Origin: Euprymna scolopes
Lineage: Eukaryota
DNA length: 64,000 nt
Reading direction: 5' to 3' (one strand)
Assembly: GCA_053919585.1 (NCBI GenBank)
Contig: CM132802.1
In this document: positions 18,497 through 63,630 of the stretch, in pieces
Layout of the letters: each line of letters begins with the position of its first letter
How positions within the stretch are numbered: position 1 is the stretch's first letter
Program-made: the position numbers and the translations under genes
Notes under the pieces: model-generated
The model's database searches: none
What the model saw: only the letters and a program-made list of their open reading frames with translations
What the model was told of the DNA's origin: nothing

Positions 18497-18640
18497 GGTT
18501 AATAGTAGCCGAATGGATACGGCCTCCGCTAATCGAGCCAGAGATGTCTCGTGTCGCGGGGTTCGAATCGTTCGACTGGTAGTAATCGTGACACCCTGCA
18601 CTGAAGAATCCCGAAAGGATGAAACACTAGTGTCTGTATG
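18497..18640 (+). ncRNA. tRNA-derived Pol III head plus intact type I hammerhead ribozyme (family T1)
   Basis: A box TAGCCGAATGG, B box GGTTCGAATC. HHR: stem I TGCA/TGTA, CTGAAGA 18601-18607, stem II ATCC/GGAT, GAAA 18621, palindromic stem III ACACTAGTGT, cleavage triplet GTC 18632-18634. Confidence 0.8.
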
Positions 18641-19226
18641 TATTTAATTATTATAGTAAAAAAATAATTATATATATATATATAGATATATATAACAATT
18701 GTTGATCATATCATACCATTTTCTGATTATTTATTCGTACTCATTTTGTCCAGTTCTTTATTTAAAACACAATGGACACTATTTACGTAGAAATCTTAAT
18801 AAACTCATTTGTTGCGTGTTAATGTTTTTTTTTCTGCCCAAGAACTAACTTTAAAATCGGTTTTATCAAAACATTTGTTGGTTAAGTATGTTTCTTAGTC
18901 CGCAGAATTAGCACAGATCCTGCTCGTTATAAATGATTCTCCTTATAAACTAATAAAATAAAGTCTACTTCTCATATACTTTTGCATATCACAAACATTC
19001 GTGCATCAATGAGGCGAACGCCTGATCATTTTTTTTTTCGCAAAGATTTTTTTGAGATTTTCAAACTCATAAAAAATCATCTTCTTGCATTATAAAACCA
19101 ATGTCCTGTGCTGGCTTCGATGTTAATGACGTAGCGATATTCAAGGACGAAATATAACTATGCAGAAATCTCTTTCTAGAATGTTTAAACGTCTTGTCAT
19201 AAGCTATGTCGGAGTAGATTGGTTTC

Positions 19227-19398
19227 CAATGTCGGTGCTACATGGACCTCAAACAATGTCGGTGCTACGTGGACCTCAAACAATGTCGGTGCTACGTGGA
19301 CCTCAAACAATGTCGGTGCTACGTGGACCTCAAACAATGTCGGTGCTACGTGGACCTCAAACAATGTCGGTGCTACGTGGACCTCAAACAATGTCGGT
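19227..19398. repeat. 27-bp minisatellite, ~6.4 near-identical units (CAATGTCGGTGCTACGTGGACCTCAAA)
   Basis: Unit starts at 19227, 19254, 19281, 19308, 19335, 19362 and 19389; no spacers. Confidence 0.95.
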
Positions 19399-20126
19399 CT
19401 CTTCTTCACATCAATTGAATTCGATTAGCTCAAACCATATGCAATGGATTTAATGCGGCGTTACTATAGGTGTAGATGTAACGTAGCCTGATTCTGCCAT
19501 TAAATTACAAAGCCAGGACATGTACAGATGCTGACGACTCACGTGGCGAGTTAATACCGTGTAAGCATTTTAAGGCGTAGCATGATCTAGATGTCACGGA
19601 ACGAAATGCGTATATAGTTATTAATATCGGAAGGAAGAAGAAAAGGAAAAGACGCGTGGCAATGTGAAAGGTGCGCTCCATAAGCGCGCGAGTTCCCCCC
19701 CCCCCTAAACTTTTGAAAGAGTTGGCTTACCCGTGAGTTCTTGAGAGAATTAAGGTAACGCCACATCTGATTGTAGCGGAAACATACGGTTGCTATCTGA
19801 CCAGAAAAAGGAAGAGGATAGAGCATACTTGTGTTGAAAATATGAAACGAACGAAAATAACTTTTCAATTCTGCCTAAAATAAAATCGTATCTAACTTCA
19901 ATTTCCTTGGCGACTGCCTCTACCGTTTGTCTTCACTTTAACAGTATTACCATCTTCATATAGAGACCATAGAATCTATGACGTAGAAATGATAATACAC
20001 TGTTTAAAATTTGTTTTCCCTTTTTTTTTTATTATTTAAAAAGTAAACTTAATTTGATCTATGGCTTCAAATTCTACGCAATTTGAGGACATGCTATTAT
20101 ACTAACTTTAATGGACGTAAATTGGA

Positions 20127-20938
20127 AATCTGTAGTGGTATGGGGACAAAAATGGATGGTCCCATTCAATGCTGCCAAGACTAAACTTGTTTCCTTCAAT
20201 AACTACAAGAAACCTTCTCTACCACCAATAGCAATGGCCGAATACTCTTTATCTGAAAGTACATCTTTTAAACTCCTCGACCTAACTTTCACAGGGAACA
20301 TGAGTTGGAAAATTACATTGAGAGCATTGCCAGAACCGCTGCGAAAAAGGTAGATTCTCTCTACTGTGCTAGAAAGCTACTAACGGCCGAAAGTATCGTA
20401 TACTTCTATAAGGCCACCATTCGCCTGTGTATGGAGTATTGTCGTCATATATTGGCTGGTGCATCTGCTACTAGTCTCTCACTCCTAGACAAGGTTTAAA
20501 AGAGAGTCGCCAACCTGATAGGTCCTGAACTTTCATCTAAGCTTCAGCCTCTGTCCTATCGACGAAATGTAGTATCCCTCAGCCTGTTCTACAAGTACTT
20601 TAACGGTGAATGCTCCGACGAACTGCAAGCACCCTCGACGTAAATACCCCCGACAAACCCGACAAGCAGCAAAATCCCACCCCTTCACAGTTGAGATCCC
20701 TAGATGTAAGAGAGCCTTCTACCCCAGTAGATTCTTCCCCAGAACCGCTAGACTTTGGAATTCCCTTCCGGGTTCCTGCTTCCCCAACAGTACTGACATG
20801 CAGAAGTTCAAGTGTAACGTGAACCAACATCTTGCTGCCCAGCTCCTAAATAGTACCTTTGTAGCTTATGTCTCTGATAGTAGCCCCCTACATAAAAGAG
20901 GTAATGTGCTTTGTTTTGGTTGAAAATGTAATAAAAAA
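20127..20938 (+). mobile_element. 5'-truncated CR1/L2-group LINE, family 1 (same family as 6871-7787)
   Basis: Colinear with the 6.9-kb copy (KWMVPFNAAKTKLVSFNNYKKPSLPPIAMA, FFPRTARLWNSLP); same 3' UTR and polyA. Confidence 0.9.
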
Positions 20939-22038
20939 TGTTTTTTTTTTTAATATTTTAACAAACTTAATTGGCACATGACTCCAAATTGAATGTATGC
21001 GAAAACAAATCTCTATTCTGGCAGCCATTGTAAATACAAATTGACCAATCTAACTTACTATTTCGGTATAGTTAAAACATGTTTGTTTTCACGGGTTTAT
21101 TAACATAACTTGCACCCCTATTGATAATGTTTACCGATCCATTCAATCATGTTTATTATCGCTCCTGTTTGAATTCATGTTTTGTAACATGGCCTAAATT
21201 CCTAATATATGACGTCACCACAAAGGTATAATTGTTTTGTTAAGATAATATTTTATCTTCTACTTATAAGAAAGTTCAAATAAATAATTTAGTAGAAACT
21301 TCTGTTATATAATGCAGCCCTACGTAGACAGACTGGACGTTTTTGGCTAGTACATTAGAGATAGATTTGAATAGCGGGGCGACATTGTTTTAGTTTAAAA
21401 GTTATTCAAGTTAAAAATCTGTCATGAACACAGCTACAGTTTTTTTTTTTTTTTAAAGGTCATTGAGGTCGCACAAGACTCGGTTCGAACGAGTATAGAG
21501 AACACCTTGACTCATGCTATTATCGTGAGAACCAGAGTTGGCGAGATTTGTAACGAGATTCACGTTCGGGGAAGTTATGAATCATATGGGAACTGATCTA
21601 ATTCATAGGCATGCACAAGACCAAACGAACAGCTGTAGCGACGTTATAACGATTTTATATGAAACCAACGGCACTATTTAATACTTAAACAAAATATCTA
21701 AAGGTTTTCGGAATCGATTCTCGATTATAGCATTTCTTTTATTGAACATTTCTTATTTACTAGTCTACCTGTTTTCGACGTTGCCTGGGAATAAGGAGTG
21801 ACTGAAGAAATTTCATTTTGCAAATTAAAATTAACGACTCTCAACAACAAAACAGAAAACGCTATTTAACCCTATCTTCATTCTAAGTCCGGGTGGTAAC
21901 TACTTTTATGTTTTTCTATTTTGGGTTGGATAGTTTTTTTTTTATTTTGGTAATGTAAGAGTATTATGCAATAAACTAATATTAAATTTAAAAAAATCAC
22001 CGTGAAATCTTTAATATAATTTTCACCTGTCTTTTTAA

Positions 22039-22530
22039 ATGTATGTATCGCAAACACTTTCGATAAAGGGAACGGATTTTCACAAAATCGGTATCATTTT
22101 GAAGATCGACACTTCGGACGACAAATATCGAAAAATTACCCAAGAACATTCTTTCACACTCAACTGGGCACTTTTCTACACGGAGGGGTCGCTTTTTTCG
22201 TCGATATTTCCGAAAGTCATCGCCTCTTTTCGGTTGTCTAGCCTTGATTTAAACCTACGTCACTTCCCGTTTGGCATGGACGAAACAGCTAACGCGTCAT
22301 GTTTTTTTTTCACTTTTTTTTTCACTTTTTTTCACTTTGTTTTTCTCCTTCGCAGTATGGGTCCGAGCTTTTTTTTTCTTTTGCTCAACTAACACCCTTA
22401 GACACACCTCCACTTTCTTTTCCGCCTTCGTGTCATGAGTTCGAGTCTGCCTGCCTACTGCAACATTTTTTTGTTTTTTTACTCAACACGCACGTACAAA
22501 CACCCGGGCAACGCCGGGCAACTAGGCTAG
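22039..22530 (+). mobile_element. Non-autonomous Helitron
   Basis: Ends CCCGGGCAACGCCGGG-CAACTAGG-CTAG|T; homologous to the array units and to 56940-57445. Confidence 0.75.
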
Positions 22531-62932: not shown

Positions 62933-63222
62933 TATGCCATGATCACTTTGACACACTGGTTCTCGTCAGATCACCGAAGTTAAGTAACTTTGAGTCTGGT
63001 TAGTACGTGATGGGTGACCATTTGGGAATTCTAGGCGCTGTATGTGCTCTCTGCTTATCTCGGCATTTGTTTCCAGTCGTCCTGTACTTCAGTTGCCACT
63101 GGTATTTAACAATGTCGTATCAGGAGAGGTGGTGTTGGGGATTGCGCACCTCCTTTCGCAAAACATTTCACGTGCATGTACCCCTTCATGGGTATCCATA
63201 GTCTGTTAAAGACTGAAAGAGC
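62933..63222 (+). mobile_element. 5S-derived SINE, full length
   Basis: 5S head plus body colinear with the 33116 copy, ending AGTCT...AGACTGAA before (TG)n(TA)n. Confidence 0.82.
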
Positions 63223-63224
63223 CC

Positions 63225-63286
<62 letters not shown>

Positions 63287-63288
<2 letters not shown>

Positions 63289-63625
63289 TGCCCGTAGATT
63301 ACTGTTTTTAAAAAGATAATAAATAAATAAATACGTTCAACTAAAAAATGGGCGACTTTCTAAGAAAAACACCGGATCTCCGAGATGGAGACGTATACTT
63401 TAACATCGTTTAAAAAAATCAACAACAAAAACTACGTAAACAGATAATCGATAAAAAAAACCAAGCAGTAAATCGTCTATGGCATGATTGCATAATGGGT
63501 TAGGGCGCTAAACTGAAATACATAAGGTCCGGGGTTCAAATCTCAACAACAGTCAAGCTACGCTGAAGAGGAGTAGGGTTCCGAAACACGCATGTCCGTA
63601 GTTTACTGTTTTTAAAAATAATAAT

Positions 63626-63630
<5 letters not shown>
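63287..63630 (+). ncRNA. Terminally repeated 304-nt unit with tRNA-derived head and intact type I hammerhead (family T5)
   Basis: Direct repeat CATG.CCGTAG.TTACTGTTTTTAAAAA at 63287 and 63591. A box TTGCATAATGG, B box GGTTCAAATC. HHR 63555-63604: 8-bp stem I AAGCTACG/CGTAGTTT, CTGAAGA, GGAG/TTCC, GAAA, ACA-CGCA-TGT, GTC 63594-63596. T5 at 63609-63613. Confidence 0.87.

What the first reader, a model, noticed from the sequence alone, without database searches (positions are those of the whole stretch)
18497..63630. At least five unrelated families of 'tRNA promoter + hammerhead ribozyme' mini-elements in one 64-kb window
Seen: the same module recurs with different sequences, namely a tRNA-derived A/B box, a 15-35-nt spacer, a type I hammerhead with palindromic stem III, and often a T run. 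Loci are T1 18497-18640 (+), T2 36355-36665 and 52213-52550 (+), T3 48403-48486 (-), T4 54332-54640 and 54971-55237 (-) and T5 63287-63630 (+). Stems I-III differ completely between families while the core is kept, and the heads resemble different tRNAs (Arg-like, Ala-like, Phe-like). Known: tRNA-SINE plus HHR exists in Schistosoma (Sm-alpha), metazoan non-LTR retrozymes are a few hundred nt long, and minimal HHRs with palindromic stem III are typical of Penelope-like elements. Inference: this genome hosts a diversified class of Pol III-driven, self-cleaving, non-coding retroelements, repeatedly assembled and probably mobilised by Penelope-like RT. I am not aware of such a radiation having been described for this kind of genome, but I cannot check the literature.
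Basis: partly seen in the sequence, partly recalled or inferred. Interest (0 to 1): 0.9.

Follow-up and report, generated by a model that had tools for sequence, protein, structure and literature searches.

The report
Hammerhead retroelement families with tRNA-like heads
The window holds copies of at least five unrelated families of short non-coding mobile repeats, each pairing a tRNA-like promoter module with a hammerhead self-cleaving ribozyme; they belong to a huge (about 75,000 intact ribozyme motifs) but already known kind of element, the Penelope-dependent "retrozyme" / Schistosoma Sm-alpha type, so far undescribed in this kind of mollusc genome.

Summary
Seven loci carry a tRNA-like A/B-box module 9-30 nt upstream of a type I hammerhead (HHR) with a self-complementary stem III. 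Three window copies are intact (T1, T2a, T5). T2b, T3 and both T4 copies are decayed, but the T2 and T4 family consensuses are canonical.

Genome-wide (5.9 Gb), two core patterns give 66,307 and 9,069 exact matches, against 47 and 63 for reversed controls. T4 copies pass Rfam Hammerhead_1 (45 bits) and tRNA. Across six families the core is invariant and all three stems covary. Outside the boxes and core the families share no similarity.

Each module is the 3' part of a 280-410-nt unit. Units are inserted as partial tandems of more than one unit, with a fixed 3' end in (TA)n, variable 5' ends and occasional inverted partial copies. These are Penelope-like (PLE) hallmarks. GIY-YIG domains in ~800-aa open frames are abundant.

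Best reading: PLE-dependent non-LTR retrozymes with a Pol III-type head, like Sm-alpha. Self-cleavage, Pol III transcription and RNA circles remain unshown; poly(A) reads showed none.

The scan had already noted such elements elsewhere in this genome. This is a new member of a known kind.

The parts
18316..18671 (+). T1 element: one 344-nt unit plus 36 nt of the next, between (TA)n tracts. It belongs to a young subfamily; two other loci are 99-100% identical over the 149-nt query.
18506..18570 (+). T1 tRNA-like module: A box 18506-18516 and B box 18560-18570.
   Evidence: Relaxed ARAGORN gives only an 83-nt pseudo-tRNA on the consensus. Rfam tRNA does not match.
18597..18638 (+). T1 hammerhead, intact. 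Core and stems II/III span 18601-18634, with the predicted cut after C18634. Stem I strands are 18597-18600 and 18635-18638.
36355..36668 (+). T2a element: the 3' half of an upstream HHR (36356-36377), one 283-nt unit, and a 13-nt tail ending in (TA)n.
36580..36655 (+). T2a B box (36580-36591) and intact hammerhead (36622-36655, cut after A36655).
52210..52566 (+). T2b: a rearranged, decayed T2 copy made of unit positions 120-284, then 1-177, then a deleted remnant. It has an A box at 52258-52268, a B box at 52279-52290, and an HHR-like stretch at 52321-52354 with CUGAUAA.
48385..48500 (-). T3: a 77-nt 3' fragment with a B box at 48450-48460 and a decayed HHR at 48407-48440 (U at G12), next to an inverted partial copy.
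55048..55245 (-). T4a: an Ala(UGC)-like tRNA head (B box 55169-55182) and a decayed HHR at 55118-55150 (G12 changed to A at a CpG).
   Evidence: The only Rfam hit is HH9 at 23 bits.
54444..54700 (-). T4b: the next unit of the same tandem, with a leader, a head (B box 54576-54589) and a decayed HHR at 54526-54558.
63282..63625 (+). T5 element: the remnant of an upstream stem III plus tail, one 303-nt unit, and a tail with a T5 run, ending in (TA)n.
63488..63618 (+). T5 A box (63488-63499), B box (63533-63543), intact hammerhead (63563-63596, cut after C63596) and a T5 run inside 63606-63618.

Best explanation
These are copies of several families of non-autonomous, non-coding retroelements of the retrozyme / Sm-alpha kind.

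Unit layout. Each unit is 280-410 nt and ends with a tRNA-like module (A and B boxes), a short spacer, a type I hammerhead whose stem III is self-complementary, and a 13-90-nt tail.

Inferred life cycle:
1. A source locus holding more than one unit is transcribed. This may start from the tRNA-like Pol III boxes of the upstream partial unit, or come from read-through.
2. Two hammerheads pair through stem III into a double hammerhead and cut out a unit-length RNA.
3. A tRNA ligase may close that RNA into a circle.
4. The reverse transcriptase and GIY-YIG endonuclease of a Penelope-like element nick a (TA)n tract and prime on the UAUA-rich tail.
5. The enzyme copies the multimeric or circular template for more than one round. 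This leaves a partial tandem with a fixed 3' end and a variable 5' end.

Shown here: the anatomy, the abundance, the structural covariation and the insertion hallmarks.

Inferred: cleavage, Pol III use, circles, and the identity of the partner element.
For: Real hammerheads:
- Genome-wide exact counts are 66,307 (13-nt stem II / 10-nt stem III geometry) and 9,069 (14/8 geometry), against 47 and 63 for reversed-pattern controls.
- T4 copies score 45 bits on Rfam Hammerhead_1, where the gathering score is 34.
- Across six families, stem I is paired in 28 of 30 cells (pairs 1-5) with 2-4 pair types per position. Stem II is paired in 24 of 24 cells with 2-3 types. The core is invariant.
- T2 and T2v differ by compensatory changes in stems I and II.
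- RNAcofold gives the textbook double hammerhead for T4, T5 and T6 dimers. No monomer folds into a hammerhead.

tRNA-like heads:
- Rfam tRNA scores 29-35 bits directly upstream of the HHR in T4 copies.
- Relaxed ARAGORN calls Ala(TGC) for T4 copies and Asp(GTC) for three T2 copies.
- B boxes match the consensus perfectly or nearly so. They lie 9-30 nt upstream of the HHR in five families that share no other similarity.
- The T1, T2 and T4 consensuses have no run of four or more T on the sense strand.

Retroelement of the PLE type:
- T2 copies end 12-15 nt past the cut in (TA)n, have variable 5' ends, and span more than one unit.
- T1, T4 and T5 behave likewise.
- Inverted partial copies lie head to head.
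- Tandem arrays occur with periods of 321-323, 344 and about 412 nt.
- GIY-YIG: 15,396 first-look candidates; all 150 scored pass the Pfam cut-off. Many lie in 800-870-aa open frames and in head-to-head clusters.

Literature:
- PLEs prefer (TA)n and form partial tandems with inverted copies (PMC8557442).
- Metazoan type I HHRs with a short palindromic helix III act as dimers (PMC4209133).
- Animal retrozymes are 170-400-nt tandem units (PMC7229834).
- Sm-alpha joins Pol III boxes and an HHR (PMC6765202).
Against: - No biochemical evidence exists here. In poly(A) RNA reads the T1 region is covered on both strands at depth 20-56, with no pile-up of ends at the cut site and no back-joints. That fits passive read-through as well as anything.
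- Rfam does not recognise the T1, T2 or T5 hammerheads as type I, nor their heads as tRNA.
- The tRNA-like module is internal and 3'-proximal.
- In T5 a T5 run 15 nt past the cut would end a Pol III transcript before the body.
- The 5' ends of copies do not cluster at a Pol III start site or at the HHR cut.
- In T2 and T5 the HHR decays as fast as the body (4.7% against 5.6%, and 5.1% against 4.9%, at non-CpG sites). Genomic copies are therefore dead on arrival, as expected, and this says nothing about function.
- The partner PLE was not read. I checked only its GIY-YIG domain and open-frame length, not its RT domain or a shared 3' end.
Confidence: 0.78

Rival explanations
1. Same elements, but the tRNA-like module is not a promoter. 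It would be either a fossil of the RNA from which the module was once built, or an RNA handle that recruits tRNA-processing or tRNA-ligase enzymes or acts as an RT stop. Transcription would come from Pol II promoters or from read-through.
For: - The module is internal and near the 3' end.
- A T5 terminator follows the HHR in T5.
- Poly(A) reads cover T1 on both strands.
- A sixth HHR family (T6) lacks any tRNA head. One long form of it carries CCAAT and TATA-like boxes just upstream of the HHR.
- Five of 29 T2 copies begin at the same base, directly after the B box.
- An earlier follow-up in this scan also called the boxes 'of unproven origin and function'.
Against: - A and B boxes stay near consensus in five otherwise unrelated families, always at the same place relative to the HHR.
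- The T1, T2 and T4 consensuses lack T4 runs although they are AT-rich.
- In Sm-alpha the same arrangement is read as a Pol III promoter that needs an upstream tandem unit (PMC6765202), and an upstream partial unit is what most copies here have.
Confidence: 0.3
2. The elements are satellite-like tandem repeats that spread mainly by DNA-level mechanisms (unequal exchange, rolling-circle amplification of extrachromosomal DNA). The hammerhead would act only on satellite transcripts, as in newt satellite 2.
For: Long arrays exist. At least 19 consecutive T2v units occur at 322-nt spacing, and there are shorter T1 and T4 arrays.
Against: Most sampled copies are dispersed insertions of 1.1-1.9 units on many chromosomes. 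They have a fixed 3' end in (TA)n and variable 5' truncation, which is a reverse-transcription signature.
Confidence: 0.1
3. The elements are ordinary LINE-mobilised tRNA-derived SINEs, and the hammerhead resemblance is chance.
For: Rfam gathering thresholds find no hammerhead in the window. A genome paper on a related kind of animal reports many tRNA-derived loci (PMC6962438).
Against: - The core pattern is about 1,400-fold over the reversed control.
- T4 copies reach 45 bits on Rfam Hammerhead_1.
- All stems covary.
- There is no poly(A) or LINE-type tail, and the head is not at the 5' end.
Confidence: 0.02

Closest known systems
Sm-alpha / Sj-alpha SINE-like elements of Schistosoma (Ferbeyre et al. 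1998; Laha et al. 2000, as summarised in PMC6765202)
   Same: A non-coding unit of about 330 nt. tRNA-like Pol III A and B boxes plus a type I hammerhead. The promoter lies in the 3' part of the cleaved unit, so an upstream tandem unit is needed. Copies are both dispersed and tandem.
   Different: A different phylum and unrelated sequences. Here at least five or six unrelated families coexist, with about 75,000 intact motifs. Stem III is fully self-complementary, which implies an obligate dimer. Insertion into (TA)n with PLE-type partial tandems is documented here. Cleavage and Pol III transcription are shown for Sm-alpha, not here.
Metazoan non-LTR retrozymes (Cervera & de la Pena 2020, PMC7229834; Li et al. 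2026 preprint, 10.64898/2026.07.22.740005)
   Same: Tandem-prone non-coding units of 170-400 nt with type I HHRs. They are proposed to be cut to unit length, circularised by a tRNA ligase and mobilised by PLEs.
   Different: Those papers do not mention tRNA-like or Pol III modules. No cephalopod was analysed. Circular RNAs are shown there, not here.
Hammerheads in the pseudo-LTRs of Penelope-like elements (Cervera & de la Pena 2014, PMC4209133; Craig et al. 2021, PMC8557442)
   Same: HHRs with a short palindromic helix III that act as dimers. (TA)n target preference, partial tandems, inverted 5'-truncated copies and a short tail beyond the repeat.
   Different: The elements here have no ORF and carry a tRNA-like module. 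Helices I (5-6 bp) and II (4 bp) are of the canonical metazoan type, not the stripped 'min-HHR'.
Ceph-SINEs and other tRNA-derived SINEs of squids and cuttlefish (named in PMC5786205 and PMC4824008)
   Same: tRNA-derived heads in non-coding repeats of cephalopod genomes.
   Different: Those are LINE-dependent SINEs with a 5' head, a shared central domain and LINE-like tails. No ribozyme is reported for them in the papers I could search. I could not compare sequences.

Membership tests
Hammerhead ribozyme, type I | Conserved core: C3-U4-G5-A6-N7-G8-A9, G12-A13-A14, the A15.1-U16.1 pair, and H17 at the cut. | tested here: met
   The core is intact in window copies T1, T2a and T5 and in the family consensus of T1, T2, T2v, T4, T5 and T6. 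It is broken in window copies T2b, T3, T4a and T4b.
Hammerhead ribozyme, type I | Three helices around the core, supported by covariation, with helix I open. | tested here: met
   Six families were compared. Stem I is paired in 28 of 30 cells, stem II in 24 of 24, and stem III pairs 1-4 in all cells, with 2-4 pair types at most positions.
Hammerhead ribozyme, type I | A score at or above the Rfam gathering threshold (RF00163). | tested here: inconclusive
   Met for T4 genomic copies (45 bits against 34). Not met for T1, T2 and T5, whose loop-less stem III the model does not fit. T1 scores 23 bits on the type III model.
Hammerhead ribozyme, type I | Site-specific self-cleavage giving 2',3'-cyclic phosphate and 5'-OH ends. 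| not testable with these tools
   Poly(A) RNA reads show no excess of ends at the predicted site. That library would not capture such products.
tRNA-derived SINE | Internal Pol III A and B boxes derived from a tRNA. | tested here: inconclusive
   The boxes are present in all families. tRNA descent is supported by Rfam and ARAGORN for T4, supported weakly for T2 and T1, and not recognised for T5.
tRNA-derived SINE | The head lies at the 5' end of the element, and the 3' tail is LINE-derived or poly(A). | tested here: not met
   The head lies in the 3' third of the unit or behind a 70-nt leader. The tails end in (TA)n, not poly(A).
Non-LTR retrozyme | A non-coding 170-400-nt unit with a type I HHR, found as tandem or partial-tandem copies. 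| tested here: met
   Units measure 284, 303, 344 and about 412 nt. Dispersed partial tandems and arrays occur. No ORF is present.
Non-LTR retrozyme | Unit-length linear and circular RNAs in vivo. | tested here: inconclusive
   No back-joints were seen over the T1 dimer in poly(A) and single-cell reads. The library type is unsuitable for this test.
Penelope-like element dependants | PLE insertion hallmarks: a microsatellite (TA)n target, a partial tandem (pseudo-LTR), an inverted 5'-truncated copy, and a short tail. | tested here: met
   compared with the description in PMC8557442.
Penelope-like element dependants | An autonomous PLE in the same genome that shares the 3' end and HHR with the non-autonomous element. 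| tested here: inconclusive
   GIY-YIG domains in 800-870-aa open frames are abundant.

The most novel reading that the evidence does not exclude
The tRNA-like module is a selected, repeatedly recruited working part of these elements. It would act as a Pol III promoter, and possibly also as a handle for tRNA-processing and tRNA-ligase enzymes. Together with the double hammerhead it would turn tens of thousands of loci into a Pol III-driven factory of small circular RNAs that Penelope-like reverse transcriptase copies by rolling-circle reverse transcription. That would be an unrecognised major component of the 'unclassified' repeat fraction of decapod cephalopod genomes, and possibly of their small-RNA world.
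Probability: 0.3. Interest if true: 0.75.

Novelty: new member of a known kind. Interest (0 to 1): 0.5.

Why it matters
Published decapod cephalopod genome papers report 'almost no SINEs' and a repeat fraction dominated by unclassified elements (PMC13218726). One squid genome listed only 235 Rfam hammerheads (PMC6962438).

This genome holds about 75,000 intact-core hammerheads in at least six families. Rfam-based annotation misses most of them because stem III has no loop.

Several young, unrelated families carry the same two-module design. That makes a natural comparative system for three questions:
- whether animal retrozymes use Pol III;
- whether dimeric hammerheads cleave in vivo;
- how Penelope-like enzymes produce partial tandems.

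It does not change what kinds of elements are known.

Tried and rejected
- Rfam at gathering thresholds on the window found no hammerhead and no tRNA, only five 5S-like hits. The E-value scan added one weak HH9 hit on T4a.
- ARAGORN at default settings found nothing.
- Rfam on the T5 head and HHR alone found nothing.
- T3: two exact-pattern searches for a repaired-core version of the family found 0 matches. The integrity of the T3 family's ribozyme therefore stays open.
- RNA evidence: one read-laying run on a T1 dimer locus gave coverage but no cleavage ends and no circular joints. This is reported as no support, not as evidence against.
- ORF and Pfam scan of the window and of 350 kb of loci found only weak RVT_1 and zf-RVT fragments and no PLE. 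A homology search of the RT fragment at 6693-7181 returned unnamed proteins.
- Divergence profile: the low HHR divergence in T1 is an artefact of how the copies were picked, because the query was the head plus HHR. I rejected it as evidence of selection. T2 and T5 show no difference between HHR and body.
- 5S-like SINE tails were inspected for a hammerhead and none was found.

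
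Full report
**Setting.** The window is C20:103,416,001-103,480,000 of a 5.9-Gb assembly with 925 contigs. Runs that hold its repeats are labelled as one coded organism and as mollusc or invertebrate metagenomes. From the size and the number of chromosome-scale contigs I infer a decapodiform cephalopod.

Assembly gaps lie at 47542-47716, 49565-50468 and 51892-52065. None touches an element; the closest is T2b, which starts 145 nt after a gap. The finding is a set of independent small loci, so nothing depends on continuity across the gaps. I could not test that continuity.

**The observation.** I read all seven loci.

- A strict descriptor finds three intact type I hammerheads: T1 at 18601-18634, T2a at 36622-36655 and T5 at 63563-63596. 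Block shuffles of the window give a mean of 0.43.
- The other four are decayed. T2b has CUGAUAA. T3 has U at G12. Both T4 copies have A at G12, a CpG transition.
- Every locus has a B box 9-30 nt upstream of CUGA, and most have an A box.
- Rfam at gathering thresholds sees none of this. It reports only five 5S-like hits and one weak HH9 match on T4a. ARAGORN finds no tRNA.

**Families.** Searching the whole genome with each locus gave first-look candidate counts, which are lower bounds:

| Family | Candidates |
|---|---|
| T1 | 314 |
| T2 | 6,128 |
| T5 | 3,347 |
| T4 | 3,605 |
| T3 | 366 |

Exact pattern counts are more telling.

- CUGANGA-N13-GAAAC-N6-GUH occurs 66,307 times, against 47 for the reversed pattern.
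- CUGANGA-N14-GAAAC-N4-GUH occurs 9,069 times, against 63.
- The first 100 matches of the first pattern are T2v, T2, T1 and T5.
- Those of the second pattern are nearly all T4, with the canonical core and stem III ACUCGAGU.

So the window's T4 copies are decayed members of an intact family.

T4 genomic copies score 45 bits on Rfam Hammerhead_1 (gathering score 34). They score 29-35 bits on Rfam tRNA directly upstream. Relaxed ARAGORN calls that head Ala(TGC).

Two further families turned up by chance in the flanks of fetched loci:

- T2v shares only a 73-nt B-box-to-HHR module with T2.
- T6 has an 18-nt stem III, no tRNA head, and often forms a head-to-head hairpin.

Family consensuses of 344 nt (T1), 284 nt (T2), 303 nt (T5) and about 260 nt of the ~412-nt T4 unit share nothing beyond the B box, a 12-nt A-box stretch (T2 and T5) and the ribozyme core.

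**Are they real hammerheads?** Across six families the core is invariant.

- Stem I is paired in 28 of 30 cells, with 2-4 pair types per position.
- Stem II is paired in 24 of 24 cells.
- Stem III is always self-complementary.
- T2 and T2v differ by double compensatory changes in stems I and II.
- RNAcofold predicts that two copies of T4, T5 or T6 form the classical double hammerhead, with stems III and I in trans. No monomer folds into a hammerhead.

This matches the described canonical metazoan type I HHR, which works as a dimer (PMC4209133). Cleavage itself is untested.

**What the element is.** The module is only the 3' part of a longer unit. Alignments show the following.

- Sequence downstream of the tail continues into the sequence found upstream of the head, so the copies are partial tandems.
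- T2 copies all end 12-15 nt past the cut, in ...GACTATA-(TA)n. Their 5' ends vary and lie in a preceding, truncated unit.
- T1 ends 37-42 nt past the cut and T4 ends 88 nt past it, both in (TA)n.
- Inverted partial copies abut several insertions.
- Arrays with periods of 321-323, 344 and about 412 nt exist.

A fixed 3' end beyond the cut, combined with a length above one unit, means the template was an uncleaved multimer or a circle.

These features are the published hallmarks of Penelope-like elements and their dependants: a (TA)n target, pseudo-LTR partial tandems, inverted truncated copies and a short tail (PMC8557442). The unit size and the HHR are those of animal retrozymes (PMC7229834; 10.64898/2026.07.22.740005).

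The genome has 15,396 first-look GIY-YIG candidates. All 150 that were scored pass the cut-off. Many lie in 800-870-aa open frames and in head-to-head clusters. That is consistent with abundant, possibly active PLEs.

**The tRNA-like head.**

For a promoter role:
- Near-consensus boxes sit at a constant place in unrelated families.
- The AT-rich T1, T2 and T4 consensuses lack T4 runs.
- Most copies have an upstream partial unit that includes the head, as the Sm-alpha model requires (PMC6765202).

Against, or open:
- Rfam does not see tRNA in T1, T2 or T5.
- The head is not at the 5' end of the element.
- T5 has a T5 run 15 nt past the cut.
- The 5' ends of copies do not pile up at a Pol III start site.

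**RNA evidence.** Poly(A) and single-cell reads laid on a T1 dimer locus cover the element on both strands at depth 20-56, against about 0-2 in the unique flank. They show no ends at the cut and no back-joints. A template-switch-oligo junction at the A box is most simply a strand-invasion artefact.

HHR and body decay equally in T2 and T5 copies, so individual insertions are neutral.

**Comparison and novelty.** The closest known thing is Sm-alpha/Sj-alpha of schistosomes. It has the same two modules, the same unit size and the same dependence on tandem copies. The broader class is the PLE-dependent non-LTR retrozyme.

Full-text searches found no paper describing such elements in cephalopods. 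One squid genome paper lists 235 Rfam hammerheads and many tRNA- and 5S-derived loci. A cuttlefish genome paper reports almost no SINEs and mostly unclassified repeats.

The scan itself had already flagged such elements on other pieces of this genome, and two follow-ups reached the same class assignment.

**Verdict.** What is new is the scale and the number of unrelated families in this type of genome.

Noticed in passing
window 3933-4150, 33116-33420, 42592-42872, 60677-60792, 61220-61326 (-), 62938-63148: Six copies or fragments of a ~300-nt SINE with a 5S-rRNA-derived head (Rfam 5S_rRNA, 46-63 bits). They are flanked by (TA)n or (GA)n and have a conserved 3' hairpin but no hammerhead. This fits the ~24,000 5S-derived loci reported for a squid genome (PMC6962438).
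   Followed up: partly
L002:2180-2300; L035:430-660; L044:420-640; also L019, L033, L048, L067, L087: A sixth HHR family (T6) with an 18-nt self-complementary stem III and no tRNA head. It often occurs as a head-to-head inverted pair within (TA)n. In L044 a long form has two ATTGG (CCAAT) boxes and a TATAAAA box about 30 nt upstream of the HHR. RNA reads carry that long-form upstream sequence (147 loose ends). It may be a Pol II-driven relative or a PLE end. Part of its 5' region resembles the distal part of the T4 unit in the window (54325-54385).
   Followed up: partly
window 18548-18630 (+): Rfam Hammerhead_3 aligns T1 at 23 bits in an alternative cis topology. An upstream GUGUC (18551-18555) pairs with the ACAC of stem III. 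A 6-bp helix I (GCGGGG / CCCUGC) encloses the T-arm and spacer. That would place a second cut at 18555/18556, inside the tRNA-like module. It may be chance.
   Followed up: partly
L039, L043, L044, L047 (and near it L037, L042, L050), 5' ends of T2 copies: Five of 29 T2 insertions start at the same base, directly 3' of the B box (TGGCTTGAGG...). This could be an RT stop at the T-arm or a tRNA-type 3' processing site, rather than random 5' truncation.
   Followed up: no
L002:2308-2527: An unrelated repeat next to T6 is by far the most highly covered stretch in poly(A) RNA (depth 650-760, strongly strand-biased). It shows 'goes back' joints at 2342/2346 to 2308. I did not identify it.
   Followed up: no
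G000 C1:11,251,822-11,257,651; C1:10,559,361-10,560,999; C1:2,303,608-2,304,610: The T2v family, which is absent from the window, forms long head-to-tail arrays of 321-323-nt units, with at least 19 consecutive intact HHRs. The same module family therefore exists both as dispersed insertions and as a satellite.
   Followed up: no
L002:1170 (T1 A box), single-cell run X23: Thirty-two reads join the template-switch oligo to the A box (GAATGG). The likeliest cause is TSO strand invasion, but sense-strand coverage from there to the A-rich tail is 17-fold over antisense.
   Followed up: no
window 6693-7181 (+): A 163-aa open frame with a weak RVT_1 match (24 bits). Its homologues are unnamed metagenomic proteins. 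It is a decayed reverse-transcriptase fragment of unknown clade.
   Followed up: partly
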